From NCBI RefSeq assembly GCF_001194135.2, contig NC_068984.1, forward strand, positions 134,163,073 to 134,227,072: a stretch of 64,000 nt of DNA, read 5' to 3'. The notes beneath the pieces were generated by a model, which was given only the letters and a program-made list of their open reading frames with translations, was not told the DNA's origin and ran no database searches. Within the stretch, counting starts at the first letter, position 1. Each line of letters begins with the position of its first letter. Origin of the DNA: Octopus bimaculoides (Eukaryota). The translations under genes and the position numbers were made by a program. This document shows positions 765-26,339 of this stretch, one piece after another.

Positions 765-1359
765 NNNNNNNNNNNNNNNNNNNNNNNNNNNNNNNNNNNN
801 NNNNNNNNNNNNNNNNNNNNNNNNNNNNNNNNNNNNNNNNNNNNNNNNNNNNNNNNNNNNNNNNNNNNNNNNNNNNNNNNNNNNNNNNNNNNNNNNNNNN
901 NNNNNNNNNNNNNNNNNNNNNNNNNNNNNNNNNNNNNNNNNNNNNNNNNNNNNNNNNNNNNNNNNNNNNNNNNNNNNNNNNNNNNNNNNNNNNNNNNNNN
1001 NNNNNNNNNNNNNNNNNNNNNNNNNNNNNNNNNNNNNNNNNNNNNNNNNNNNNNNNNNNNNNNNNNNNNNNNNNNNNNNNNNNNNNNNNNNNNNNNNNNN
1101 NNNNNNNNNNNNNNNNNNNNNNNNNNNNNNNNNNNNNNNNNNNNNNNNNNNNNNNNNNNNNNNNNNNNNNNNNNNNNNNNNNNNNNNNNNNNNNNNNNNN
1201 NNNNNNNNNNNNNNNNNNNNNNNNNNNNNNNNNNNNNNNNNNNNNNNNNNNNNNNNNNNNNNNNNNNNNNNNNNNNNNNNNNNNNNNNNNNNNNNNNNNN
1301 NNNNNNNNNNNNNNNNNNNNNNNNNNNNNNNNNNNNNNNNNNNNNNNNNNNNNNNNNNN
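765..1359. other. Assembly gap (others: 2642-3179, 5541-6357, 36236-36260, 45474-46031, 56246-56255, 57619-57628, 58941-58950)
   Basis: Runs of N, mostly next to microsatellites. Confidence 0.99.
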
Positions 1360-1895
1360 TGGCAGAATCGTTAGCACGCCGGGCGAAATGTTTAACGGTA
1401 TTTCGTCTGCCGTTACGTTCTGAGTTCAAATTCCGCCGAGGTCGACTTTGCCTTTCATCCTTTCGGGATCGAAAAATTAAGTACCAGTTACAATGTAATC
1501 GACTTAATCCCTTTGTCTGTCCTTGTTTGTCCCATCTATGTTTAGTCCCTTGTGGGCAATAAAGAAATACAAAAACGTTAGCACTGCGGCCGAAATGCTT
1601 AACCGAGGTCGACTTTGCCTTTCATCCTTTCGGAGTCGATAAATTAAGTACCAGTTGCGTACTGGAGTCGATCTAATCGACTGGCCCTCCCTTCTCAAAC
1701 ATTTTGGGCCTTGTGCGTAGAGTAGAAAAGATTATTTCTTCCAAACTACTTCTGAGTTCAAATTCCGCCAAGATCGACTTTGCTTTCATCCTTTCAGGGG
1801 TCAATAAATCAAGTACCAGTTGCGTACTGGGGTCGATGTAATCGACTTACCCCTCCCCCAAAATTCCAGGCCTTGTGCCTATAGTAGAAACGATC
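1360..1895 (+). mobile_element. Three tandem copies of SINE family B (tRNA head plus Meta/MESC-like central domain)
   Basis: Repeated GTTCAAATTCCGCCGAGGTCGACTTTGCCTTTCATCCTTTCGGGGTCGATAAATTAAGTACC core. The domain name is recalled from the literature, not verified by alignment. Confidence 0.8.
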
Positions 1896-2535: not shown

Positions 2536-3185
2536 TATCCATTTTTCTGAAAGTTATGAGGCATCAAAATCGGGCGGGGACACTTGTGTAGTTATGCCGT
2601 CTTGCTGATTAAACAACTGAATACTCATCGTCGAAATCAACNNNNNNNNNNNNNNNNNNNNNNNNNNNNNNNNNNNNNNNNNNNNNNNNNNNNNNNNNNN
2701 NNNNNNNNNNNNNNNNNNNNNNNNNNNNNNNNNNNNNNNNNNNNNNNNNNNNNNNNNNNNNNNNNNNNNNNNNNNNNNNNNNNNNNNNNNNNNNNNNNNN
2801 NNNNNNNNNNNNNNNNNNNNNNNNNNNNNNNNNNNNNNNNNNNNNNNNNNNNNNNNNNNNNNNNNNNNNNNNNNNNNNNNNNNNNNNNNNNNNNNNNNNN
2901 NNNNNNNNNNNNNNNNNNNNNNNNNNNNNNNNNNNNNNNNNNNNNNNNNNNNNNNNNNNNNNNNNNNNNNNNNNNNNNNNNNNNNNNNNNNNNNNNNNNN
3001 NNNNNNNNNNNNNNNNNNNNNNNNNNNNNNNNNNNNNNNNNNNNNNNNNNNNNNNNNNNNNNNNNNNNNNNNNNNNNNNNNNNNNNNNNNNNNNNNNNNN
3101 NNNNNNNNNNNNNNNNNNNNNNNNNNNNNNNNNNNNNNNNNNNNNNNNNNNNNNNNNNNNNNNNNNNNNNNNNNNNNNNGTTTAA

Positions 3186-4812: not shown

Positions 4813-6381
4813 GCCAATTCAACGATCGCGTTGAGGCTTCTTCTCCACCTCAGAAGAAATGGGGTATGTTATAGTCAGCCCTTTCCCTCTGTGGCGTAGC
4901 GTGGGCTTTGGTTGCCCTGTGCTGTAGCTAAGCTGGCCATCCTCTATCTTGTACGTACCATATCTTCAACTACAGTGAATACTGGTAAAATAAAGTGGCA
5001 AAGTGGCCGGCTTCAGAGATGACTTCCAGCTCATAGCTATATGTTGGTGTTAAAACTGATGGACATATTAAGTGCTGCCGCCTGCAAAACAACGGCGATA
5101 CTTTCTACGGGTTTCCGACTACTCTCAAGGCTTTCACTCCGAAGGTCAATGTCCAATCTGCAGCGCACTGGGACCGAACCAGGAATTAAGTGATTGCGAA
5201 GTGAATTGCTTAACAATATGTCTCTATCAACATCCGAAGTGTCACTTAGGTATCTCTTGAGTTTCTTTCTTGCATGTGTATTAATGGATGCGTGCATATA
5301 TATATATATATATAAATACAAATAATAAATGGGTATATGCATATATACGTACATACCTTCATCTACATGTATATATAGATGCATACTTGAGTACAGGACG
5401 TTGCAAAAAACGTGGACAAAATGATAAACAGAGTACAGAAAACATACAGGCCACATAGAGAACATTTCCTTCATCAGCTGCCACCATTCTAAAACTAAGC
5501 GTTTCGAAGAGTTATATACATATATATATATATATATATANNNNNNNNNNNNNNNNNNNNNNNNNNNNNNNNNNNNNNNNNNNNNNNNNNNNNNNNNNNN
5601 NNNNNNNNNNNNNNNNNNNNNNNNNNNNNNNNNNNNNNNNNNNNNNNNNNNNNNNNNNNNNNNNNNNNNNNNNNNNNNNNNNNNNNNNNNNNNNNNNNNN
5701 NNNNNNNNNNNNNNNNNNNNNNNNNNNNNNNNNNNNNNNNNNNNNNNNNNNNNNNNNNNNNNNNNNNNNNNNNNNNNNNNNNNNNNNNNNNNNNNNNNNN
5801 NNNNNNNNNNNNNNNNNNNNNNNNNNNNNNNNNNNNNNNNNNNNNNNNNNNNNNNNNNNNNNNNNNNNNNNNNNNNNNNNNNNNNNNNNNNNNNNNNNNN
5901 NNNNNNNNNNNNNNNNNNNNNNNNNNNNNNNNNNNNNNNNNNNNNNNNNNNNNNNNNNNNNNNNNNNNNNNNNNNNNNNNNNNNNNNNNNNNNNNNNNNN
6001 NNNNNNNNNNNNNNNNNNNNNNNNNNNNNNNNNNNNNNNNNNNNNNNNNNNNNNNNNNNNNNNNNNNNNNNNNNNNNNNNNNNNNNNNNNNNNNNNNNNN
6101 NNNNNNNNNNNNNNNNNNNNNNNNNNNNNNNNNNNNNNNNNNNNNNNNNNNNNNNNNNNNNNNNNNNNNNNNNNNNNNNNNNNNNNNNNNNNNNNNNNNN
6201 NNNNNNNNNNNNNNNNNNNNNNNNNNNNNNNNNNNNNNNNNNNNNNNNNNNNNNNNNNNNNNNNNNNNNNNNNNNNNNNNNNNNNNNNNNNNNNNNNNNN
6301 NNNNNNNNNNNNNNNNNNNNNNNNNNNNNNNNNNNNNNNNNNNNNNNNNNNNNNNNNATATATATATACATATATATATAC

Positions 6382-9780: not shown

Positions 9781-10400
9781 TTATACTCTTTTACTTGTTT
9801 CAGTCATTTGACTGCGGCCATGCTGGAGCACCGCCTTTAGTCGAGCAAATCGACCCCAGGACTTATTCTTTGTAAGCCTAGTACTTATTCTATCGGTCTC
9901 TTTTGTCGAACCGCTATGTTACGGGGATGAGGAGGAATGATTGATCCAATGCTGTAACTAGGGAACCTAATATTGGAATGCTGATAAGGCGACGACCTGG
10001 CAGAAACGTTAGCACGCCGGTCGGAATGCTTAGCAGTATTGCGTCTGTCTTTATGTTCTGAGTTCAAATTCCGCCGAGATCGACTTTGCCTTTCATCCTT
10101 TCGGGGTCGATTAAATAAGTACCATTAACGCACTGGGGTCTATGTAATCGACTTAATTCCTTTGTCTGTCCTTGTTTGTCCTCTCTATGTTTAGCCCTTT
10201 GTGAGCAATAAAGAAATAAGAAACGTTAGCATGCTGGGCGGAATGCTTAGCGGTATTTCGTCTGTCTTTACGTTCTGAGTTCAAATTCCGCCGAGGTCGA
10301 CTTTGCCTTTCATCCTTTCGGAGTCGATAAATTAAGTACAATTTGTGTACTGAGGTTGATCTAATCGACTGGTCCCTCTCCCAAAATTTCGGAATGCTGA
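9781..10400. mobile_element. Cluster of SINE family B: reversed 3' tail (9781-9950) plus two tandem forward copies (9985-10400)
   Basis: Same core as 1360. The tail CTTGTTTCAGTCATTTGACTGCGGCCATGCTGGAGC recurs at 22740 and 56465. Confidence 0.8.
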
Positions 10401-12471: not shown

Positions 12472-15268
12472 GTAACTGATTGTATTTATGCGACCTGGGG
12501 CAAATCTGTTTTATATTGTTTCATAGTTGTCTCTCACGGCAATATACACCAATGATTGATCGATCATATTGGGGTAAAAAAATCGAAGAGACTGGTGTAC
12601 GCCAGCATGGAACATCAAGCCGTATTTTAGGCATTGGCATTTTCATCACTGGATTACTGTTTCTAGCTGTTGCTCTCATCATGGGATTTGAGTTCCCCAA
12701 ACTCATCTACACTGGAATTACTGGCCGGCAGTGTTATTTCTCTGACCAAAGTATAAACTATGAACAATGGGTAAGTCAACGTTTTCACTTCTTTCAAACA
12801 CTGGCGTTGCATCCTACTCTTTTATTCATTATTTTACTAATTTAGATCATTGGATCACCCAATCTGGTTCATCACTCGGGTACGCGGCCCTTGTGTGTAT
12901 AGTTTCTGATGATAAGGATTTTAAACTCTGTTGGAATCATAAATACTTCAGTTTCAGCTTTGAGTCAACCAGTGTGACAATGTTTTCTTTTGCTTATTTC
13001 TACCATGTTTACCTTTTTCAAATATTAGCTGTGTAGGAGCATTCATGTTATTTCCTCAGCATAGCACCCTGTAGCTTTATTATTTGCTTATTCTAATTTT
13101 ATTTCAATTTCCGTTGTTTCTTCTCTCTCTTCACAAATGTTTGCCATTCCAGCTTCTGTTTCGTATTTGTTACCTTCATAAAAGACAAGATTTTTTTTGT
13201 AGTTATTTGTCCTAATTTTCCATTATTCCTTACCAGATATTTTTGTTACCCTACAGTGGATATTTTACGATAATTTACTAGTTGCATAAAGCCCTTACCT
13301 TCTTGTATTCGAGGTAAATATAAACATGCTTATGAAAGATTTTGGGTGCTGTATTCTGAACGTAGCCTTTAATTTTCTTGCCTTTTTGTCTGTCTAGTCT
13401 TTCTGGTTCCTTTAGTATTCAGTTAACAATAACGATACATTATTACTGTGACAGCTAGAGTATTGATGCCCATCACTTCATTTTATTTATTTTGCATTTA
13501 GCTCGGTTTCCAGTATTGATCTAATACGTTTATGTTACTTTCTCACTTTTCTATCATTTGTATGCTTCGTTTTCAGTCTAGTTCGTTGATTATGAATTAA
13601 GTGTGTTTTGATCTAATTCTCTTATCTTCATTTCTTTATCTAGTATAATATAACTGTTCTTAATTAATTTTCCTTTCTTCTGGAAAAAAACATTGCATTG
13701 GCGTTGTTGTTGTTGTTCTTCTTCTTCTTCGTATTATTATTATTATTATTATTAGGGTGGCGAGCAGGCAAAATCGTTTGGGTATCGGACAGAGTACATA
13801 GCAATATATCTTCCGACACATTACATTCTAAGTTCAAACTCCGCCAAGATCGACGCTATTCTTTTATATCGACCGGTACTTATTTTATCGACCCCGATAA
13901 GATGAAATGCCTTCTAAATCAGTTTATTTTACATTATGAAATGCCTTTCATCTTATCGGGGTCGATAAAATAAGTACCAGTCGAGCATTGGGGTCGATAT
14001 AAAAGACTAGCCCTTCCCTCTAAATTTCAGGCCTTCTACCTATAGTGGAAAGGGTTATCATTATTGTTTTGTTTTCCCCCCGGAATTGTTGCTGTACCCG
14101 GTTTAATTGTATTCCACATCGAGGAACAGCATGTGATCTCAGATGAGGAATATTTTGTGCCTTCTGTATAAAAGACTTTGCCTTTCATCCTTTCAAGGTC
14201 GATTAAATAAGTACCAGTTACGCACCGGGTTCGATGTGATCGACTTAATCCCTTTGTTTTTCCCCTCTATATTTAGAAATAAATACTTTACTTTTCCGAA
14301 CCGGCATGCCACATCGATTTTAGTAGTCACTTCTTCTTGTAGATGACTGTTGTATGCAATCTGTTGCATTCTACTCTTTCAATCTGTACAAGAAAGCCAC
14401 ACAGCAACCTCACTTTGTCGTTTCTCAGTACTGGCATTTTTTCTGTGCAAGCAAAACCAAATTTCCTGCAAAAATTACTGTGTATCATTGCAACACTCTT
14501 ATGGTTATACTTCTTGTATTCATTCTGAGCAAGTTTAATGACACTCGAAAACAACTCATCCATACCGGAACTGTGACTAGTAGAAAACACCGAGACAAAG
14601 AGCATGAAACTGATGATACAGAGTAGAAAACTTAGCTGCTTGATTTGTCGGAGTAAAACCTACCTAAGAGCCAAATGTATGGGCTCTATGCAAATGAAGT
14701 ACGAAACGGAAATATAAGATCTGAGTTCAAAAATACTATTGGCTACTAATAAAGGTCTCCGAGATATTTACCTGACGAAAACATGGGTTCTTATTTATCC
14801 ACTCAGAACAAAGAACTCACAGACGATTCTACTCTCGCCATCATTACATTGATCAACTGGAGAGGTTGTGTAAAGACAGCAGAATGCTCTGATCAATGTA
14901 AATGGACTTTTGAATTTTATATATCTTGTTTTAATTTATGCATTTCATGTAATTATTTGTATGTTGCCTCTTTAAAGTTTTCAAATTTACATTGTAAAAT
15001 AGCAAAATGGTCGAAAGTATAAAAGCTTCTTGGAATATTGTTAACAACAAACTCATTATCATATAAACAACAGTAGGTTTTAAATCATTCTAAATATCTA
15101 TATTCTAAATGTCTAGTCTAACGGTATTCTGAGATGATCATACTTCTGGCAAAAGAACTTTGGAGTTTTGGTGTCCATTCTACTAAGTCAGTTTATTTTA
15201 CATTATACTTCCCAAGTTTTACTTTTGCAATCTTTGTCTACATTTTATAGCCAGTTTAAACAAATATT

Positions 15269-15387: not shown

Positions 15388-18300
15388 GACACGTCTATAA
15401 CATTATTCTGCATATGTTTATCTCTGTGATAAAATATTTAATGCCATTTGTCTTCAAGACTGCTGAAATATTTGTCTGAAACATATCTTTATTTTTCTCC
15501 TTATTAGAAAAATGATGACTTCTACACACACTATAACAGGATTTATTATTTCGTGATTGACAATGTCGACGACTATTTGTACAGAAAACAGAAGCCCAAG
15601 GTATGTTGCTTCAACCGTTTCTATAAGTATACATCATTCTCGAGTATTATTTATTATTAACACAATCATGTCGTTGAAAACTGGATGTTTATGTTAGCTT
15701 ACCATCTATAAAATTCGCTCCCAAGCCTTCCTATAGCTGTAGCTAGATATTGTGAGGTAAAAACAATTCTTTAAACTAAGATGTTTGCTGTAAAGGAGAG
15801 GAATAAACTGCTGTTACTCAGTTGGCCAGTCGTTATAGAATACGCAATACAAGTCAACCTAGAAGAACTGATACAGCTTTAAAAGCCTTACTAATAATTA
15901 ATGTGTGCATATTAAGCTAATATCAATTATTCCTATATTCAAAATACATAATACTTGCATCATTTTGTGATATTTATAGTAGCTTATGTGTGTGTGTGTG
16001 TGTGGCTGTTAGATGTGATTACCACTTGTGCTTGAGCTAATTAGCTAACAGCTGTATATGACTGCAGATGTTGGGAGCTGTCTGTTGTGTCTAGCGTCGG
16101 AGGTCAACAGTTGTATACAGAAGAAAACGACGAAATCTGTTGAGGTTTTTACGGACAAAATTACATGTTCTCTCCATTTGACAAGCTGCCACACTGTTTC
16201 TGTCAACTCAGTTTCATTCATAAGTCATGGGTCAACTTGAGCTTATAGTAAAAGATACCAGCCCAAGATTCCACACCTGATGAGACTGAATAATTTCAAA
16301 ACACCAGGTATTGCAGAGTCCCTTGCGCTAATGTGTCAAATATGTTATGAGAATACATTTATTGTAAAGGAGAAATTGTTCTGTGACAAAACACAACAGC
16401 AGTTGGCATATTCACATTTGGATCTTCTGGAATGTATTAAGAATAAATATGTGAGACATCGTTTTGATTCTTGCTAGTTACCGTGCATATAACGATTTAT
16501 TTTAAACTTTATATTTGATTTTTAGTGCTTTTAGTTGCTAACTGAGAGTTCTGCTTGATACAGCAGGGATATTTGCTCAGTTGTGATTACAGTGACTTGG
16601 GCTTGTACATATATCATTTTAATCAACAAGAATGAAATAGTTTAAATGCTAATACAAAACTATGAAGTAATACATTTTTAATGCAACAGACACTGGATGG
16701 TATAGCATTTTTAATTCTATCCCCAACATAAAAAAAAAAAACAAAAAGCAAAACAAAACAAAACAAAGAAACCCACATTTGACATAATGAATGATTTGAA
16801 TGACAAAACAAAATTGAGATAATAACATTGCTTGAAGAGAAAAGTAGGAACAACAGAAGCTTTTCAAAACTGGGGAAGAAAATATTTTTATTAAGTTTTG
16901 ATGAAGCAGTAATAGTAGTAGTTGTAGCAGCAGCAATAGTAGTAGTAGTAGTAGTAGTTGTTGTTGTAGTAGTAATCATGACTAATGTTGTTTTAATTAT
17001 TTCGGCAAATTTGGGAAAAAGACTCTACATATTTCATTCTTATGATCTTATGATCTCACCAGAAGGAATTGAGACTTTTATAGTCATCAAAATTTATGTC
17101 TTTTTTTATTTTGTAATATCCATAAAATGTGATAGTTTGGTATTTCAGATACGTGAAGTCGGACCCTATGTCTATAAAGAGTCTAGAAAACATACACAAA
17201 TAGATTTATTAGGATCAAAGCTATCTTATGAAATATTACGACAGCAGACTTTTGATGAGCATCAAACGAGGTTAGAATGTGGTATAAATTGCCATGAAAA
17301 TGATAAGGTATGTTCTCTCTTTCTCCTTCCTTTTTTAAATTGGCCATTATAACGTTCAGTTTACGGTGAAAATACTTGCTAATTTGATATTGGTAAAGTA
17401 TAAAAATTGTATAATTGATACCAACATTATTGATTTGCTTTAATCTTACAAGATGAACAAGTTAATAATATAATTTTGTTTTTGTTTCAAAAGTGGAAAA
17501 ACATAACGTTAATGTTCAAACATTTAAGTGGTGCCATAGTAGAAGAAACAGTTTACTGGTTAATAGAAACCATAAAAAGGCCTTTATGCAGGCTTGCTTC
17601 ATGTTAGCCAATGTCTTTTGAAAGGGTATGATTACAACAAAATTCTCATTTACCCTTACACTAAAACACAGGTTGTTTTTTCTCTACCCAATCAAAACAT
17701 ATCTAGTAGTTATACTGCTACTAATAGACCTAGGATTAAATTTCTTGAATCCAAGTTTGTAATTCTGTTTCAATCCTTGACTGTGGCTTATTTTTTTTCC
17801 TATTATTCTTGGGCAAGAAATCACACAAACTCATTTTATTTGCCTTTTGAATCAACCAGAAATTTACTTAGACCTTGTTTAGCCCTGACTGAGCAAACCG
17901 TTCTAGCAATAACTGCCTCATCTTTATTAAGATGTCATCTAAAATTACATTATTCAGTGTTCTGGGCACAAAGGTGAGACACGAGGGAGATATAGTTGCT
18001 ATTTCTAGTACCTTGATTGGCTATGCAGAGATTCTGTCATTACTGCATGTCAGGGGAAATGTGTAAGGCAAATACTTTTATTTGCAGCTAAGTCTTTTAA
18101 GAACACCAGAGCAGAGTATCTGCTGCATCAGCCTGACCAATATCAATATGTCATTTGTATTGTTTAGAATTAATTCAATATATTTCTTTCTATTTCATAC
18201 TTGGAAGCTGAACATTTTTAACTTGGAATACTTATACAATGTTTCTTTGTGGGGAGGAGAAAATAATTTTATACTTTCAAACATCCCTGATCTCTTACAA

Positions 18301-21300
18301 CATCAACTTCATTTAGCTTTCATATTATATAATGGTACAGACTTTTATGGTGACTTAGCGAAATTCCCATCAGAAGATTGGTTGCAGAGTAACCCAAATG
18401 CTTCCCTCAATTGGTCTATCACTAATTGGATAACTCAACAGACGATAATACCTGAGCAGTTATTAACAAACTTGTCTTTCAACAGAGATGAGATACAAGC
18501 TCTGTACAATGTGATTATAGATCCTCAAAAATTTGGTACAACCTGCTTAAATGGTCTCAAGAGTTCCACCCAATGCATCAATGCTGAACAGAAGATGACT
18601 GAAAATGAATGTGTTTATAAAGACACTAATCAACATTGTAAAAATGCACAAAAAACAGAAAAGCAGAATGCTACATCTGAATTTGGTTTAATCCAACATT
18701 TAGAAAATTGGAAATTAACCAATGACACGATCCATCATGAACATATCCAACAGTTATTATGCTCAACTGTTGCAAACTTCTCTGTCAATTCCACCACTGA
18801 CTGTTTTGTCTTTGACAAACACAACATGACTTTGAATATTTTCATGGATCTGCTCTTTGATTATATTTTCTCACATTTGGCCTTGCTCAGTCATAATTCT
18901 TTGCCACCAGAATCCAGGAATCTAATTTTCACAAGTACTCAACAGGATATAGCGAAAGGTTATTTTACAGGAGAATACAAACACAAAGGTATCTTGACTA
19001 ACAATTTTGATGTGAAAGACACATTCCAGGAAAACCCCAGGTGGATATTTTATACCTGCCTTCATGAAAACCATATTAAAAACAACTTTCTTCTGACTGG
19101 TGAGTATAACATTTATAGAGTATTTTTGAACAAAACATTACAAATAATGTAGGTATGTATGTATGTATGCATGTATGTATGTATGCATGTATGTATGTAT
19201 GTATGTATGCATGTATGTATGTATGTATCTTGAGTATTGAGGCAATGGTGCACAAGCACCGGTTATGTTGGACTGGACACCTTATTAGAATGAAGGATAG
19301 CAGGATTCCTAAGCAGATGCTATATGGAGAACTTGTGAATGGAAAGAGACTCTGGCAGAAACCAAGGTTGCGATTTAAGGACTGTGTCATGTCCTCATTA
19401 AAGGCTTGTGATATGCAGGATACTGACTGGGGGAACAATGCCTGTCATCGTCACAAATGGAAGAAGCAGGTTAAGGAGGGGATTGATACTTTTGAGAGAG
19501 CACGTATCCAGCATGAAGAACTTAAGCGAGCTGTGCAGCTTGTATAGTGAATGGGGAAAGCTCGGTCTGCAATGTTTGCAGTCGTGTATGCTTATCAAGA
19601 GCAGGGCTCATTAGCCACCAACAGAGCCACAAATGCAAAATATAAGTTAGTCCTAGAGCGCACAATGTTCCTGAAGGTCAGCAATGGTCTTCCTCGGTCA
19701 CGAGTGGATGGCCATCATCATGATCATGTATGTATGTATGTATGTATGTGTGGTGTGTAGGTATGTGTGTGTATGTATGTAAGTAAGCATTTATATGTGT
19801 TTTTGTGTAAACTGAGAGGCCTTATGTCCAGCAGTGGTGGTAACATTGCTAATTGTGCATTTCTGCCACCTTGGGTTTCATCAGTAGGCCATGCTGGGGC
19901 ATTGCCTGAAGGGTTTAGGTGACCAAGTCGACCCTAATACCTACTATTAAGTCTGGTAATTATTCTAATTTGCTTTTTTTTTGTTGTTCTGCTAAGTTAC
20001 AGTTGTAAAAAAAAAAACAAAAAAAACAAAAGCCAAGGGATGGAAAATGGTATACACAAACACAAACGTACACTCACATATACAGTGGGCTTCCACACAG
20101 TTTCTGTGTACCTTATTCACTCACAAGGCACTTGTAGGTCTGGGGGCTACATTAGTAGACATTGTACAAAGTGCTGTGTTGTGGGACTAAGCTCACAACC
20201 ACATGGTTACAAGTGAGCTTCTTAATTATACAAATATTCATGTACTTGTAAATATGATTGAATATGAATCTACACTAGGATTTTAATTATTATTGTTGTG
20301 AATAAGATTTATTATTATTTGTTAAATTCAAATTACGATAAATGTAAACAAACAAATGAAGTTTGCTTTTAGAACCGTTGAGATGTCTTAGAAAGTTAAA
20401 GAAGTGATTTTTAAATTCTCAAACGCAGGATAATGCTAATAATATAGCCTGAACAGGATAAGCTACCCCTATTTTGCAGAAAAAAGTGTTGGCAACTAGC
20501 TATTATTATTGTTACAGAATAAATGAATAAGGAATAAGTTTTCTTGCTTTCCCTAAAATATAACAGATAGGCCAATCAATTGTGGTGGAGATAAATATTT
20601 ATCTATGAAATATATCACAGCAGATATCTCAAAGAATGTAGAACACAATAAAAAAACAATAGCTCCGTTGTTTAAAACCTAACATACCCGAACACAAGAC
20701 GTTTTCTAAAATAAGTTCCGCAGTAGGATGTTCACTGAAAAATTTACAACATTAATCAAGATTTTAATTTTTTGAATTAGCCAATAAATACTGCTTAAAT
20801 AATTGCAGAATATGACAACCATACCTGCATCCCAGCAATTTACTTCCCACGAGTCACAGCATCATCAAAGCTAAAAGTGAATGGTTACGTATATTTTACA
20901 CCACAGGCTCCACTTACGACTGTATGCCGAACCCCAGTATTTTACTCAGATAAATATTCAATGTTTATGCCTGAGTTCTGGCGAACATTGACATTTTCTA
21001 AGCAGAATGAGCTAGAAATGAACTGTGTCCGAGTGGGCAGATATTTACCTGTTAATGGTAAGTATAAATTCATTATGGACAAAATATTGATAAATTAGAA
21101 ATTCTCTGAAAATCAATGAAATATTCTTACTACTTTTGGCTCAAGACCAGCAGTTTTGAGGGTTGGTGGCTAATTGATTACATTGACCCAAGTACTTGTT
21201 TAGTATTTTATTTTATCAATACCAAAAGATGAAAGGCAAAAATAGCCTTGGTGGTATTTGAATTCAAAATGTAAAGAGATGAAAGATATGCTACAAAGCA

Positions 21301-24185
21301 TTTTGTCTGGTGCAGTAACAATAACATTTAAAAAAAAAAAAAAAACGGGAAAAATAATCCAGAATCCTTGTCCGGTGCTGGATTGATCCCAAAATCTAAT
21401 CAGTTTGTGCCAGTTATGAGGCAAAACATCCCTGAAAGTTTCATCTGAATCCATCCAGCGATTCTTGTGGTATCTTGTCCATGGACAAACAAACAAACAA
21501 ACAGACATGACTAAAAACAATACGTCTGCCTTTGCTAAGGAGGTAATAATAATCCTTTCCACAAAGGCACAAGGCCTGAAATTTGTTGAGAGGGGGACTA
21601 GTCAATTCCATTGCCTCCAGTATATAACTGGTACTTAATTTATCAATCCTGTAAGGACGAAAGGCAAATTTGACCTTGGTGGAATTTGAACTCAGAACAT
21701 AGCAATTTCATTCAGCGTGCTAACAATTCTGCCAGTATTGTAGAGATACAATATCAGAGACATAAGTAAAAATTGAAATAAGTTTATTTGTTTAATTATT
21801 CTGCTCTTTAAATCCTCTCATTATTGAATGTTTTCCTTCCTCTTTTTAAAGAACAAACACAATCATTCCAAATGATCAAAACGCCAAAAATTGTATATTG
21901 GGATTACACAGTAAAAAGAGGGAAAGCAAAGGGAGATAAGCAATCTTTTTAATTGTTTCGTATGTTCAAATTTGTATTGAAGAACAGAAAGAGAATATTC
22001 GATTATGAAAAAAGTATTCAATAAATAAACTATTTAATTTTCTGCTTATGTCTTTGATATCGTATTCCTGCAATACATGTTTACCATTTTTGTGAGTAAA
22101 TATGCTCACTGTATCACGAATTACCTTTATTTTATTGATGTTGCACAATGAAACATGTTATAATATATTTCTCAAACAGATTTAATTTTAAAACTATAAA
22201 TCATGTTTTAAAGATCGTTTTTCTTTTTATTTTCCCTTAAAACAGTTATTCTGACACAGCATAATAAAAGAGTAAATATGCTATATGTTCCTCAAATAAA
22301 CTTTCTTCTAAAAATAATTCATCTCAAAATTTGGTGTTCTCAGTATTTGGTCTTCTGGTCCTTTGGCACTCTGTTCATTAGGGGACTTGAAACATGGCTT
22401 GCTCATGCTTGGCCTTATTGAAATTGATTGTATATAAGTAACTACTGACCCTGAAAATTGTTGACTGGCCTAGTACCTAAATTAGAAACCATTAAATAGA
22501 TTTAATATACATTCTTATATTTGTATTATTTTCCACTTCATATTATTAAAGACTGGGTTTTTTTAATTCACTTCAATTGAATTCCTGACTACAGCATCAT
22601 TTAATTCCAGTGCCAACCTTTCTTTAGCTGTGTTTGAGCTTCAATAGAGTGAGAATAAAAAGTTTCTTTTTTTCTCCATGAAATTATGAATGCAAATATA
22701 GCAAATGAGAGCTATCAATCATATTGATAAATATCTGCATACTCTTTTACTTGTTTCAGTCATTTGACTGTTGCCATGCTGGAGCACCACCTTTAGTCGA
22801 CCAAATCGACCCCAGGACTTATTCTTTGTAAGCCTAGTACTTATTCTATCGGTCTCTTTTGCCGAATCGCTAAGTTACAGGGGACGTAAACACACTACCA
22901 TCGGTTGTCAAGCAATGTTGGGGGGGACAAACAGAGACACACAAACATATACACACACACATATATATATATACATATATATGACAGGCTTCTTTCAGTT
23001 TCCGTCTACCAAATCCACTCACAAGGCTTTGGTCAGTCTGAGGCTATAGTAGAAGACACTTGCCCAAGGTGCCATGCAGTGGGACTGAACCTGGAACCCT
23101 GTGGTTGGTAAGCAAGCTACTTACCACACAGCCACTTCTATGCCTATATTCACTTTTACTTGGACACATGATTCTAATTTTGGAAAAGGAAAGAAATAGT
23201 AGACCCAGGTATAATACTCATTCTTATGACATTAAGTGCAGAAAGCTGGAAGCAAATTTGATTCCAGAGGAATTCAAAGATATGAGTTAGAAACTCAGCT
23301 GTGTGAAGCTAAATGACTTAAGGAATTACAACTCTGCACTCTTTATATGAATTTAGATATTGATTTACAACATTGGCATAATGGACACAAATTATGGTGT
23401 GGAAGGCAAGTCAATTAAATTAACACCAGTACTTCACTGGTACTCGATTTATCAACCACTGTATTTTATCTGTAAAATATTCGAAGGTAAACTCCATACC
23501 GTTATGATTTGAGTTTAGCAGAAAAGATATGTAACCAAATACAAAAATGCATAAATTTGTCCTATATTCTACTGATTCTGTCTTTTACTCTTAAAAATTA
23601 ATGTTAAATGACTTCAGGCTTTTCCCAGCAAATGCCTATCTGTAATAATATTTCTTCAATTCTTAGATGAATTTAAAGTCGATGGATTCTTCATTGAAGA
23701 GGATGGTATTCAGAATGTTACTCAACAATGTGGTTATATGAGTTTCTTAAGTCATCCCTACTCAACAGCCAGCAATATTACACAAGTAGAAAGAAAAACA
23801 AAAAGCAACAAATCCCATTGTTATGTAATTATTTTCTTTATACAAATATTAATTTCACTCTCTTTCTTCTTCTCCACTTACTCTATAAAACACTATTTTA
23901 CGCTTTATACTCTAATTTCCTTATTTTCTTATGAACTCTTTTTTTCAAATATTTGTTTCTGCCTTCTTCAATTCTTTCCTTCCATATTTTATTCTAGCTT
24001 CAATATATTGAAACAGTTGATAATAAATACATGCATACATATATACATTCAAATCTGTACATATACATACACACAAAAATACCCTGTTGGTGTTGTTGAA
24101 ATTCCAATGAAGGAGCCTTGGATCTAGGTCAGAAACTGGCTCTTTTTCTATTGACAAGAAATCTTGAAATAAAACTGAATAATGT

Positions 24186-24839: not shown

Positions 24840-26339
24840 CGCTGGACTGGCTCCTGTGCAGGTGGCACATAAAATACACCATTTCGAGTGTGGCTGTTGC
24901 CAGTACCTCCTGACTGGCCTTCGTGCCAGTGGCACGTAAAAGCATCCTCTACACTCTCTGAGTGGTTGGCGTTAGGAAGGGCATCCAGCTGTAGAAACTC
25001 TGCCAAATCAGATTGGAGCTTGGTGCAGCCTCTGGCTCACCAGTCCTCAGTCAAATCCTACAACCCATGCTAGCATGGAAAGCGGACGTTAAACGATGAT
25101 GAATAATAAACGATAATAATAATCATAATGAGGGTTTCTTACACTGGATTGAGGCTACGCAGTTTGAGAGGTTACTATTGATCAAACGGATAAATATGTA
25201 ACTGGTACTTATTTTATCAAACCCACTGACATTTTTAATTCAATGTAAATGGACTGTCTGCCATCTTGTGTGTCCTGAATCTGCTGGTAATCACAGGCAC
25301 ATTCACATTTATGCACAAAACACAAAGCTACTGTCAAGAACAATGCATCCAAATGAAGTCCCATCTGTAAATTGCATATACACTTGTACTTCTTCTTTCA
25401 GATATATATTGAACCAGTAACAGGACAGATTTGGCATCGAGTAATCAGTTTCCAGTTTAACATCAAGATTTCCAGAAAACTGTTTGATTCTAAATGGAAG
25501 CAGCCTCTCAATTTGGCTTCTTTCGAACATCTCTTACCTGTTTACTGGGTGAAAACAGTCACAACAATGACACAAATTCAGCCATACAAAGATTTTGTAA
25601 GTTTTTTTTATTTTTTTTTATAGATATAACTAGTTGTTGTTGTTTAGTCCCAAGTCGGTTCTGACTGAGCAAACCTATGATCAGATATTCTAGTCATGGC
25701 TATCCTGTCATTTGTCTTTAGGCTGTGTGCTTCTTTCTCTTTTTAAGATAATAGTGTGATATGAGGGAGAGCTAGTTGTCAACTGAAGACTGAGCATCTA
25801 CATACATGCCCCTCTTGTTGAATAAATAGCTCTTTTAATTTCTGGAAAGGAAAAACAAAATTCATGTATATTTGCTCTCTTTCTTTTGTGTGTGTGTGTG
25901 TGTATGTGTGTGTGCATATATATAAATTAATGCAAGCAGCTACACGTGTGAAAAGCCAGATCTGGCTAGTGTGAATATAAAACAGATCAAGTGTTTTGAC
26001 TGGATATGGCTGGTTTAAATGCTAAAGGGTCAATACCAGAAAGTGAAGATACCTTAGATTTTATCACATTCAATGTCTACCAGGCAAAATATAGACTATA
26101 GAAATAAGTGAAATAAAAACCTTTATGATGTAAAAGAAAAGATTGCTTCTGGCTTTGTTAAGGTAAATATTTTCAGCTCTTTATTCTTGTTGCAGGTAAC
26201 AAATATGAGGAGATGGGCCTGTGGAGGTTTGATCAGCTTTACTCTCCTAGCTTTGTCCATCATGATGTGTGGTAGCTTTATCATCTTTAAGCCTTATGTC
26301 TTCAACAGAGTGTATCCTTTACCAGAAGCAACTACTTGA
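12437..26339 (+). CDS. Divergent CD36/SCARB (LIMP-2-like) scavenger receptor class B gene, 9 coding exons, 2169 nt, about 722 aa
   Basis: Exons 12437-12471, 12527-12770, 15508-15600, 17149-17307, 18208-19099, 20809-21057, 23667-23824, 25402-25596 and 26196-26339 join through GT-AG introns with matching phases (2,0,0,0,1,1,0,0) into one ORF. It has N- and C-terminal TM helices and CD36-family motifs in the expected order: [64 protein letters not shown]. Confidence 0.9.
12527..12770 (+). CDS. CD36-like exon 2: cytosolic N-tail and N-terminal TM ([22 protein letters not shown]); alternative ATG at 12552
   Basis: Hydrophobic helix followed by ...SINYEQW and a canonical donor TGG|GTAAGT at 12771. 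Confidence 0.88.
13752..14055 (+). mobile_element. Rearranged SINE family B copy with an internal inverted duplication
   Basis: Head at 13752-13860, then an inverted copy of the core, then the forward core and tail. Confidence 0.8.
14340..14600 (-). pseudogene. R4/Dong-like (restriction-like endonuclease) LINE ORF remnant
   Basis: Translation [27 protein letters not shown]...[24 protein letters not shown] resembles the R4/Dong LAQ.EYK.RH....IH..LC...VLEN...K.LWDF.IQTD motif. Confidence 0.65.
15508..15600 (+). CDS. CD36-like exon 3 ([31 protein letters not shown])
   Basis: Pyrimidine tract plus AG at 15507, 93 nt phase 0-0, donor AAG|GTATGT. Matches the CD36 Y.FN..N......KP segment. Confidence 0.88.
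17149..17307 (+). CDS. CD36-like exon 4 ([11 protein letters not shown]...[10 protein letters not shown])
   Basis: Signature EVGPYVY, acceptor tatttcAG, donor AAG|GTATGT, 159 nt. Confidence 0.92.
18208..19099 (+). CDS. CD36-like exon 5 (892 nt) carrying an insertion of about 200 aa
   Basis: Lies in the long stop-free ORF 18082-19152. It starts LNIFNLEYL after acceptor ttggaAG and ends at ACT G|GTGAGT (phase 1). Contains [14 protein letters not shown]. Confidence 0.85.
19229..19727 (+). mobile_element. 5'-truncated RTE/BovB-like LINE 3' end inside an (ATGT)n tract
   Basis: [37 protein letters not shown]...KPRLRFKD, the typical RTE ORF2 C-terminus. (TATG)n lies on both flanks. Confidence 0.85.
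20809..21057 (+). CDS. CD36-like exon 6 (...[11 protein letters not shown]...[14 protein letters not shown]...VGRYLPVN)
   Basis: Acceptor aattgcAG, phase 1-1, 249 nt, donor AAT G|GTAAGT. Corresponds to the CD36 G.DG..F.P / F....CRS....RY region. Confidence 0.85.
21345..21549 (-). mobile_element. Helentron-associated (DINE-1/HINE-like) non-autonomous element among family B SINE copies (21130-21320, 21550-21740)
   Basis: Minus strand reads ATTACCTCCTTAGCAAAGGCAGACG...TGTCTG(TTTG)n...GGATGGATTCAGATGAAACTTT, the terminus-plus-microsatellite layout of HINEs. Confidence 0.6.
22740..23140 (-). mobile_element. Composite SINE: family A head plus family B tail
   Basis: Both segments match other copies in the window. 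Confidence 0.75.
23667..23824 (+). CDS. CD36-like exon 7 (DEFKVDG...[20 protein letters not shown]...KSHCY)
   Basis: Acceptor ttcttAG, phase 1-0, donor TAT|GTAATT. Matches CD36 G..dvs.C.....S.PHF...H. Confidence 0.82.
24620..24800 (-). mobile_element. SINE family B copy (CpG-decayed)
   Basis: CTGGTACTTATTTTATTGACCCTGAAGGGATGAAAGGCAAAGTCAAC core. Confidence 0.78.
24840..25105 (+). mobile_element. SINE family D with RTE-like 3' tail ending in (GAT)n
   Basis: GGTTGGCGTTAGGAAGGGCATCCAGC...AACCCATGCTAGCATGGAAAGCGGACGTTAAACGATGATGA. Related copies at about 42270-42440(-), 50885-51060(-), 53905-54030(-), 55740-55900(+) and 55930-56110(-). Confidence 0.75.
25402..25596 (+). CDS. CD36-like exon 8 ([23 protein letters not shown]...LLPVYW...)
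   Basis: Classic iEP.TG..Q.N..lP..W motif, acceptor cttctttcAG, donor TTT|GTAAGT, 195 nt. Confidence 0.92.
26196..26339 (+). CDS. CD36-like terminal exon 9: C-terminal TM and short tail, stop TGA
   Basis: Acceptor ttgttgcAG, translation [53 protein letters not shown] signals lie downstream near 26818 and 26925. Confidence 0.88.
   Translation, partial: VTNMRRWACGGLISFTLLALSIMMCGSFIIFKPYVFNRVYPLPEATT

What the first reader, a model, noticed from the sequence alone, without database searches (positions are those of the whole stretch)
18250..18921. CD36-family receptor with a Cys/N-glycan-rich domain of about 200 aa inserted at the ligand-binding apex
Seen: the spliced ORF is about 722 aa. Between IFNLEYL and [14 protein letters not shown] there are about 236 residues, all in one exon, with 6 Cys (an even number, so possibly 3 disulfides) and 10 N-x-S/T sequons (NVS, NGT, NAS, NWS, NLS, NAT, NDT, NFS, NST, NMT). 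Known: in LIMP-2/CD36/SR-BI the equivalent stretch (NIP...FVTHTVDELLWGY) is only about 30-40 aa and forms the apical helical bundle that binds ligand (glucocerebrosidase, lipoproteins). Animal members are usually about 470-550 aa, while Dictyostelium LmpA-C are much longer. Inference: a distinct subfamily with a new apical recognition module on the lipid tunnel. This could be an ancient long-form lineage retained in molluscs or a lineage-specific scavenger/chemosensory co-receptor (insect SNMPs are CD36 proteins).
Basis: partly seen in the sequence, partly recalled or inferred. Interest (0 to 1): 0.72.

Follow-up and report, generated by a model that had tools for sequence, protein, structure and literature searches.

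The report
Octopus long-apex CD36-family scavenger receptor
The window holds an annotated but unstudied octopus gene for a CD36-type membrane receptor whose tip carries about 200 extra amino acids. This enlarged tip is real and conserved, but it belongs to an old receptor lineage shared with chitons, annelids and cnidarians that was described in 2023, so it is a new member of a known kind.

Summary
One 892-nt exon (18208-19099, + strand) encodes a 229-aa stretch (aa 167-395, window 18235-18921) with 6 Cys and 10 N-x-S/T sequons. It lies between two CD36-family anchors that are only about 28 aa apart in human LIMP-2.

The gene is Octopus bimaculoides LOC106880172: 702 aa rather than 722, 8 coding exons, and two transmembrane helices. 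It matches Pfam CD36 at E = 1e-23.

The Argonauta hians ortholog has the same exon structure. The insert is under purifying selection (dN/dS about 0.14).

The insert is not an octopus or mollusc novelty. The protein aligns end to end, insert included, with the "long-apex" SR-B clade of Boohar et al. 2023 (GBE evad218), which comprises one chiton, one annelid and six cnidarian proteins. A profile built only from those proteins' inserts scores the octopus insert at 40 bits, against at most 14.9 bits for 2000 shuffles. A tree built from core columns puts the octopods inside that clade (100% bootstrap), next to the chiton.

The insert has no Pfam or PDB relative, and structure prediction failed because the alignment had only two sequences. 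Function is untested for any clade member. A glycosylated, disulfide-braced helical ligand-binding apex is an inference.

Verdict: a new member of a known kind, of low to moderate interest.

The parts
12552..12770 (+). Coding exon 1: start codon, short cytoplasmic N-tail, transmembrane helix 1 (aa 25-45) and the start of the ectodomain, with clade-invariant C61
   Evidence: ATG at 12552 and donor TGG|GTAAGT. The model translates exactly to RefSeq P0001. Hydropathy peak at aa 25-43.
15508..15600 (+). Coding exon 2 (aa 74-104), the 'IYYFVIDN' beta-strand motif of the CD36 domain
   Evidence: AG/GT borders, phase 0-0. Part of the Pfam CD36 match aa 33-166.
17149..17307 (+). Coding exon 3 (aa 105-157), with the EVGPYVY motif and the clade-specific C148-x3-C152
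   Evidence: It is the best match to LIMP-2 in the PDB, aa 70-124.
18208..19099 (+). Coding exon 4 (892 nt, aa 158-454 plus 1 nt), which holds the whole apex expansion and the following conserved 'TxxQxDxxxGY' hinge
   Evidence: Borders are ttggaag|CTGAAC and TGACTG|gtgagt. It is one exon in RefSeq X1 and X2 and in Argonauta (L001 8859-9720, 862 nt).
18235..18921 (+). The apex expansion (aa 167-395, 229 aa): 6 Cys, 10 sequons, with clade-invariant W231, C342 and C356
   Evidence: dN/dS is 0.14 against Argonauta. No Pfam or PDB relative.
18544..18672 (+). Octopod-specific Cys-rich sub-insert within the expansion (about aa 270-312). C301 is found only in the two octopods and C270 only in O. bimaculoides. 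This is the fastest-evolving part.
   Evidence: Other clade members have gaps here. Identity to Argonauta is 49%, with two deletions in Argonauta.
20809..21057 (+). Coding exon 5 (aa 455-537, phase 1-1), skipped in predicted isoform X2
23667..23824 (+). Coding exon 6 (aa 538-590), donor TAT|GTAATT
   Evidence: The RefSeq model and Argonauta both read ...[17 protein letters not shown].
25402..25596 (+). Coding exon 7 (aa 591-655), with the conserved IEPVTG / FQFN / LPVYW motifs of the CD36 C-terminal barrel
   Evidence: (second weak LIMP-2 stretch).
26196..26339 (+). Coding exon 8 (aa 656-702 plus stop): transmembrane helix 2 (aa 666-686) and the short C-tail
   Evidence: Hydropathy peak at 666-686.

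Best explanation
The feature is the enlarged apex of the octopus ortholog of an old class B scavenger receptor paralog, the 'long-apex' SR-B clade known from a chiton, an annelid and several cnidarians. The protein (LOC106880172, 702 aa) has two membrane helices and a roughly 620-aa ectodomain. About 200 extra residues replace the short alpha4/alpha5 helices that form the ligand-binding tip in LIMP-2, CD36 and SR-BI. Shown here: the extra stretch is coding, lies in one exon, is conserved in Argonauta under purifying selection, is enriched in N-glycosylation sequons, and is homologous to the apex expansions of the other clade members. It therefore predates the mollusc-annelid split and probably the cnidarian-bilaterian split. 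Inferred: the expansion folds as a mostly helical, glycan-covered module braced by two ancestral disulfides (the four clade-conserved Cys: C280, C292, C342, C356), and it serves as the ligand-capture surface on top of the CD36 beta-barrel. Octopods added a ~30-40 aa Cys-rich loop that evolves fastest. The ligand, the cellular location and the presence of a lipid tunnel are unknown.
For: Identity: Pfam CD36 E = 1.1e-23. The reconstructed CDS is identical to RefSeq isoform X1. There are two hydrophobic helices. Coding status: a 361-codon open frame; the same 8-exon structure with the insert in a single exon in Argonauta; dN/dS of 0.14 for the insert and 0.10 for the whole protein; 9 of the 10 octopus sequons are kept in Argonauta, which has 10 of its own. 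Clade membership: blastp gives single alignments over the whole ectodomain with the chiton Acagr_SR-B_2 (206 bits), the annelid Dimgy_SR-B_1 (152 bits) and cnidarian long forms (87-117 bits), against 31-35 bits (N-terminus only) for short-form lophotrochozoan SR-Bs. An HMM built only from the 7 non-octopod inserts scores the octopus insert at 40.0 bits and Argonauta at 44.4, with a best of 14.9 among 2000 shuffles. W231, C342, C356 and the EMxGLY/KFG motifs are co-linear. A neighbour-joining tree on 386 core columns gives 100% support for the long-form clade including the octopods, 87% with the chiton and 78.5% with the annelid. The canonical CD36 disulfide cysteines are absent, as reported for this clade. 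Location at alpha4/alpha5.
Against: Identity inside the insert to non-octopods is only 16-22%, and pairwise BLAST of the insert alone is weak at 19-27 bits. A two-sequence octopod profile of the insert found nothing else among 1.84 billion representative proteins. Boohar et al. could not exclude long-branch attraction for the clade, and my tree is neighbour-joining with few taxa. There is no usable 3D model (pLDDT 29 and 37), so 'helical', 'disulfide-braced' and 'tunnel' remain untested. The C-terminal half alone does not reach Pfam CD36. No functional data exist for any clade member.
Confidence: 0.8

Rival explanations
1. The insert is an octopod- or mollusc-specific novelty, a new recognition module gained recently, for example for chemosensation in suckers.
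For: The octopod-only profile search found no other protein. There is no Pfam or PDB match. An octopod-specific Cys-rich sub-insert does exist at aa ~270-312.
Against: A profile built only from chiton, annelid and cnidarian inserts detects the octopus insert at 40 bits, against at most 14.9 for shuffles. Whole-ectodomain alignments run through the insert, and W, Cys and motif landmarks are shared. Only ~30-40 aa are octopod-specific.
Confidence: 0.05
2. The apex expansions arose independently at the same hot spot in lophotrochozoans and cnidarians, and the clade is a long-branch artefact. The octopus protein would then share its insert only with other lophotrochozoans.
For: Boohar et al. describe apex expansions as repeatedly independent across eukaryotes and could not reject long-branch attraction for this clade. 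Identity to cnidarian inserts is 16-21%.
Against: The four Cys, the invariant W and the EMxGLY-KFG block occur in the same order in cnidarian and octopod inserts. The core-only tree gives 100% support, and its internal order follows the species tree. The clade shares N-terminal Cys (C61, C148, C152) and the loss of the canonical Cys.
Confidence: 0.1
3. The insert is an annotation artefact: a retained intron or a non-coding open frame that is absent from the mature protein.
For: No RNA-seq could be inspected here. The first homolog search with the exon alone returned nothing.
Against: The frame is open for 361 codons in AT-rich DNA. The exon is present in both RefSeq isoforms. It is a single exon with the same phases in Argonauta, has dN/dS of 0.14, and is homologous to protein sequence in seven other species. 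The negative result was a false negative of that tool, since P0001 contains the query exactly.
Confidence: 0.02
4. Same protein, different role: it is an endolysosomal membrane glycoprotein (LIMP-2/Lmp-like). Its glycan-rich apex would shield the membrane or bind a luminal cargo, rather than acting as a cell-surface scavenger or chemosensory receptor.
For: The closest solved relative is LIMP-2. Ten of the 14 sequons are concentrated in the apex.
Against: No recognisable di-leucine or YxxPhi sorting motif in the short tails, by my reading of the sequence. The similarity to LIMP-2 is marginal (E = 5e-4 over 55 aa). No localisation data exist.
Confidence: 0.3

Closest known systems
Long-apex SR-B clade of Boohar, Vandepas, Traylor-Knowles & Browne 2023 (Genome Biol Evol 15:evad218): Acagr_SR-B_2 (chiton), Dimgy_SR-B_1 (annelid), Aurau_SR-B, Nemve_SR-B_4, Stypi_SR-B_4/5, Acrdi_SR-B_2, Xensp_SR-B_3 (cnidarians)
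   Same: Two-TM SR-B proteins with an ectodomain over 500 aa. The expansion sits at the alpha4/alpha5 position and is homologous (40-bit profile hit, shared W, Cys and motifs). The canonical CD36 disulfide cysteines are absent, and the clade shares the N-terminal C61/C148/C152. The octopods group with this clade in a core-only tree.
   Different: No cephalopod was in that study. At about 620 aa, the octopus ectodomain is at or just above the top of the metazoan range the study reports (367-616 aa). Octopods carry an extra Cys-rich loop (aa ~270-312) and more sequons (10, against 2-8 in the others).
LIMP-2 / SCARB2 (PDB 4F7B, 4Q4B, 5UPH and others), CD36, SR-BI
   Same: CD36 domain, two TM helices and the conserved N-terminal strands (EVGPYxY). 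The hinge 'T..Q.D...GY' matches 'THTVDELLWGY', and the IEPxTG motif is present.
   Different: Only 28 aa lie between the anchors in LIMP-2, where they form the three-helix ligand-binding tip; there are 232 aa in octopus. The canonical disulfide cysteines are replaced. Sequence similarity is marginal (E = 5e-4), and the C-terminal half alone falls below Pfam detection.
Dictyostelium LmpA/LmpC and other non-metazoan long SR-Bs
   Same: They also have enlarged, multi-helical apices at the same topological position.
   Different: The literature treats these as independent expansions with no homology between lineages. I did not test them directly.
Insect SNMP1/2 (CD36-family chemosensory co-receptors)
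   Same: The same protein family.
   Different: SNMPs are short-apex forms in an insect-specific group (table of clades). Nothing here links the octopus protein to chemosensation.

Membership tests
Class B scavenger receptor (CD36/SR-B) family | CD36 domain detectable above the curated threshold | tested here: met
   PF01130 scores 83.9 bits against a cut-off of 26.5, E = 1.1e-23, over aa 33-166 plus a second weak stretch. The precomputed annotation for P0001-P0003 is also PF01130.
Class B scavenger receptor (CD36/SR-B) family | [quoted passage not shown] 2023) | tested here: met
   Kyte-Doolittle peaks at aa 25-45 (2.79) and 666-686 (2.28), and nowhere else.
Class B scavenger receptor (CD36/SR-B) family | Asymmetric beta-barrel with an internal tunnel | tested here: inconclusive
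   AlphaFold2 with a 2-sequence alignment gave pLDDT 29, which is not interpretable. Deeper alignments were not accepted by the tool.
Class B scavenger receptor (CD36/SR-B) family | Canonical disulfide cysteines (human CD36 C243-C311, C272-C333, C313-C322). These are common in bilaterians but not universal. | tested here: not met
   All six positions are non-Cys or gaps in the octopus and in the other long forms. The literature reports this as typical of the long-apex clade, so it does not argue against family membership.
Long-apex cnidarian-lophotrochozoan SR-B clade (Boohar et al. 2023) | Ectodomain over 500 aa, with the expansion between motifs M4 and M6 (alpha4/alpha5 position) | tested here: met
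   The ectodomain is about 620 aa. There are 232 aa between the N162-L166 and T399-Y409 anchors, against 28 in LIMP-2.
Long-apex cnidarian-lophotrochozoan SR-B clade (Boohar et al. 2023) | Groups with clade members in phylogeny, to the exclusion of short forms | tested here: met
   Neighbour-joining on 386 core columns gives 100% bootstrap for the clade and 87% with the chiton. Bit scores are 87-206 against clade members and 31-35 against short forms. Caveat: a simple method with few taxa.
Long-apex cnidarian-lophotrochozoan SR-B clade (Boohar et al. 2023) | Apex expansion homologous to that of the other members | tested here: met
   An HMM from the 7 non-octopod inserts scores 40.0 bits (octopus) and 44.4 bits (Argonauta), against at most 14.9 for 2000 shuffles. 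W231, C342 and C356 are invariant.
Insect SNMP-type chemosensory CD36 proteins | Membership of the insect group 3 clade and expression in chemosensory neurons | not tested
   No insect sequences were included in my tree, and no expression data are available with these tools.
Amoebozoan LmpA/B/C | Groups with the amoebozoan Lmp clades, with homologous apex sequence | not tested
   Not compared here. The literature treats these expansions as independent.

The most novel reading that the evidence does not exclude
The roughly 170-230 aa apex module is one ancient domain (invariant Trp, four conserved Cys, an EMxGLY-KFG block). It arose before the cnidarian-bilaterian split and defines a second SR-B paralog that is retained in cnidarians and lophotrochozoans, including cephalopods. 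None was recovered from the ecdysozoans or deuterostomes sampled by Boohar et al. On this reading it is not a set of lineage-specific expansions or a long-branch artefact. Octopods then elaborated it with a fast-evolving Cys-rich, glycan-rich loop that could tune ligand specificity.
Probability: 0.55. Interest if true: 0.4.

Novelty: new member of a known kind. Interest (0 to 1): 0.25.

Why it matters
The apex of CD36-family receptors is where ligands are recognised: glucocerebrosidase by LIMP-2, and lipoproteins, fatty acids and pathogen proteins by CD36 and SR-BI. A conserved 200-aa replacement of that tip implies a different, still unknown ligand class, and no member of the long-apex clade has been studied functionally.

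Adding two octopods has two effects. It extends the clade to cephalopods, and it adds evidence against the long-branch-attraction caveat left open in the 2023 paper. That evidence is insert homology shown with a profile that excludes the octopods, plus a core-only tree that follows the species tree.

The practical gain is modest. It gives a clean gene model, a defined domain boundary for expression constructs, and a list of conserved residues (W231 and the Cys at 280, 292, 342 and 356) to mutate.

Tried and rejected
1. The homolog search with the exon alone found nothing. This was a false negative of the word filter, because the full-length query later retrieved P0001, which contains the exon exactly. 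I do not use it as evidence.

The protein is too divergent for this approach.

3. I rejected it because no donor is in phase with exon 5, and it is absent from the RefSeq and Argonauta models.

4. I guessed a micro-exon at 25319-25357 ('[13 protein letters not shown]', which resembles LIMP-2 'AIEGMHPNQ'). I rejected it because it has no AG acceptor. RefSeq and Argonauta instead extend exon 6 to 23824.

5. A third homolog search, using a 9-sequence clade profile, returned only the three octopod proteins. I therefore could not map the clade in squid, bivalves or gastropods.

6. AlphaFold2 on the full length (pLDDT 29) and on the insert alone (pLDDT 37) was unusable. I ran no fold search, because low-confidence models give meaningless matches.

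7. The insert profile found no match in PDB sequences or in Pfam. The DUF6115 and MSL1_dimer hits (E = 0.08-0.09) are noise.

8. Literature searches for cephalopod CD36 and for LOC106880172 found nothing relevant.


Full report
WHAT IS THERE

The window is AT-rich animal DNA with assembly gaps. At 18067-19149 the + strand is free of stop codons for 361 codons. At the local GC content of 37% this is expected by chance about 1e-11 of the time (my arithmetic).

Using splice signals and family landmarks, I assembled an 8-exon coding model: 12552-12770, 15508-15600, 17149-17307, 18208-19099, 20809-21057, 23667-23824, 25402-25596 and 26196-26339. All exons have GT-AG borders. Its translation is identical to RefSeq 'uncharacterized protein LOC106880172 isoform X1 [Octopus bimaculoides]', which is 702 aa (P0001). 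A predicted isoform X2 (619 aa) skips exon 5.

The likely cause is a candidate exon at 20567-20634, which is out of phase and is not used by RefSeq or by Argonauta.

- Between IFNLEYL (aa 160-166) and [14 protein letters not shown] (aa 396-409) lie 229 residues, at window 18235-18921.
- All of them lie in the single 892-nt exon 4.
- Ten of the protein's 14 sequons fall in this third of the sequence. Shuffles of the insert give 3.8 +/- 1.7 sequons, P = 0.002.

IT IS A CD36-FAMILY PROTEIN

Pfam CD36 (PF01130) matches at 83.9 bits (cut-off 26.5), E = 1.1e-23, mainly through aa 33-166, which correspond to profile positions 2-133 of 463. Hydropathy shows exactly two transmembrane helices, at 25-45 and 666-686. 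This is the SR-B topology, with an ectodomain of about 620 aa.

The protein is very divergent. The only solved relative by sequence is LIMP-2, at E = 5e-4 over 55 residues. The C-terminal 336 aa alone do not reach Pfam.

In a multiple alignment, octopus N162-L166 pairs with LIMP-2 N137-L141, and T399-Y409 pairs with T170-Y180. Those 28 residues are helices alpha4/alpha5 of the ligand-binding three-helix tip.

THE INSERT IS CODING AND CONSTRAINED

Argonauta hians has an ortholog (P0003, 691 aa, 76% identity). Its locus (L001) has the same eight coding exons with the same phases. The insert exon is again a single exon, 862 nt against 892 nt.

Nei-Gojobori estimates (dS is saturated at about 1.5, so the ratios are rough) give the following:

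| Region | dN/dS | dN |
|---|---|---|
| Whole protein | 0.10 | 0.14 |
| Insert (aa 167-395) | 0.14 | 0.24 |
| Barrel core | 0.03-0.10 | 0.09-0.12 |

The insert evolves about twice as fast as the core but is clearly under purifying selection. Nine of the ten octopus sequons are kept in Argonauta, which has ten of its own. The insert has 6 Cys in octopus and 5 in Argonauta, because C270 lies in a deletion.

THE INSERT IS NOT NEW

A profile of the two octopod inserts found nothing else among 1.84 billion representative proteins. The insert also has no Pfam or PDB relative.

The literature, however, already describes this kind of protein. Boohar et al. 2023 (PMC10715195) surveyed SR-Bs in 165 eukaryotes. 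They report repeated expansions of the apex at the alpha4/alpha5 position. They also report one well-supported metazoan clade of six cnidarian and two lophotrochozoan proteins with ectodomains over 500 aa that lack the canonical disulfide cysteines. Their data set contains no cephalopod. I took the sequences from their supplement.

Four tests place the octopus protein in this clade.

- Whole-protein alignment. The octopus protein aligns as one segment across the whole ectodomain, insert included. Scores are 206 bits with the chiton Acagr_SR-B_2 (27% identity), 152 bits with the annelid Dimgy_SR-B_1, and 87-117 bits with the cnidarian long forms. Short-form lophotrochozoan SR-Bs reach only 31-35 bits, at the N-terminus.
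- Insert-only profile. An HMM built only from the seven non-octopod inserts scores the octopus insert at 40.0 bits and the Argonauta insert at 44.4 bits. The best of 2000 shuffles scores 14.9 bits.
- Shared landmarks. The inserts share an invariant Trp (W231), an EMxGLY...KFG block and four co-linear Cys, which are octopus C280, C292, C342 and C356.
- Core-only tree. A neighbour-joining tree on 386 core columns, with nearly all of the insert removed, gives 100% bootstrap for the long-form clade including the octopods. Support is 87% for octopods plus chiton and 78.5% for adding the annelid, which follows the species tree.

All six canonical CD36 disulfide positions are non-Cys in the octopus, as in the rest of the clade. 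What is specific to octopods is a ~30-40 aa Cys-rich loop at about aa 270-312. It carries C301 (and C270 in O. bimaculoides only) and is the least conserved part of the insert.

HOW IT PROBABLY WORKS

Shown:
- It is a two-pass membrane protein with a large ectodomain.
- The apex is enlarged, conserved and sequon-rich.

Inferred:
- The apex is a glycosylated, mostly helical module held by two ancestral disulfides.
- It replaces the three-helix tip as the ligand-binding surface.

Both of my AlphaFold models are all-helical there, but at pLDDT 29-37 they carry no weight. Published models of a clade member (Aurelia) show multi-helix apices with no known domain homology. The ligand, the subcellular location and the presence of a lipid tunnel remain unknown. 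A lysosomal LIMP-2-like role is as compatible with the data as a surface-receptor role. Nothing supports or excludes the chemosensory idea.

VERDICT

Of its two evolutionary readings, the 'ancient long-form lineage' fits the data. The subfamily was already published in 2023 and the gene is already annotated, as uncharacterized. It is therefore a new member of a known kind.

The small added value here has three parts:
- the extension of the clade to cephalopods;
- evidence that the apex expansion is homologous across the clade, rather than lineage-specific or a long-branch artefact;
- the definition of an octopod-specific Cys-rich loop.

Noticed in passing
window 39743-40165, - strand: A 140-aa ORF with a transmembrane helix, a Gly-rich tail and the C-terminus ...[10 protein letters not shown]. 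It matches the Pfam Syndecan domain (PF01034) at E = 1.4e-9. It looks like the last coding exon of a neurexin- or syndecan-type adhesion protein encoded on the opposite strand, downstream of the SR-B gene.
   Followed up: partly
window 20809-21057 (coding exon 5): Predicted RefSeq isoform X2 (P0002, 619 aa) skips this in-frame 249-nt exon. That removes 83 aa of the barrel core, including clade-invariant C494. It is unclear whether this is a real splice form or a prediction artefact.
   Followed up: no
window 19240-19550, + strand (intron 4): An open frame reading '[30 protein letters not shown]...' sits next to a (TGTA/TGCA)n microsatellite at 19150-19230. It looks like the tail of a retrotransposon ORF. 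There was no Pfam match.
   Followed up: partly
window 25304-25367, + strand (intron 6): A short stretch translates to '[18 protein letters not shown]', which resembles LIMP-2 'HFYQADERFVSAIEGMHPNQ' (tblastn E about 2). It has no usable acceptor site and is not in the RefSeq or Argonauta models. It is either chance or a decayed duplicate exon.
   Followed up: partly
window 1396-1560, 2302-2480, 9988-10125, 10045-10303, 14137-14343 and others, both strands: Copies of a short interspersed repeat recur through the window. Their translations share 'LSSNSAEVDFAFHP' and 'FKFRRGRLCLSSFRGRKIKYQL'. This is probably an octopus SINE-like element.
   Followed up: no
L001 14907-39484 (Argonauta hians): The last intron of the Argonauta ortholog is about 24.6 kb, against 0.6 kb in the octopus window (25597-26195). 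All other introns are of similar size.
   Followed up: no
window 765-1359, 2642-3179, 5541-6357, 45474-46031 and four short runs: Runs of N (assembly gaps) occur at these positions. None lies inside the SR-B gene.
   Followed up: yes
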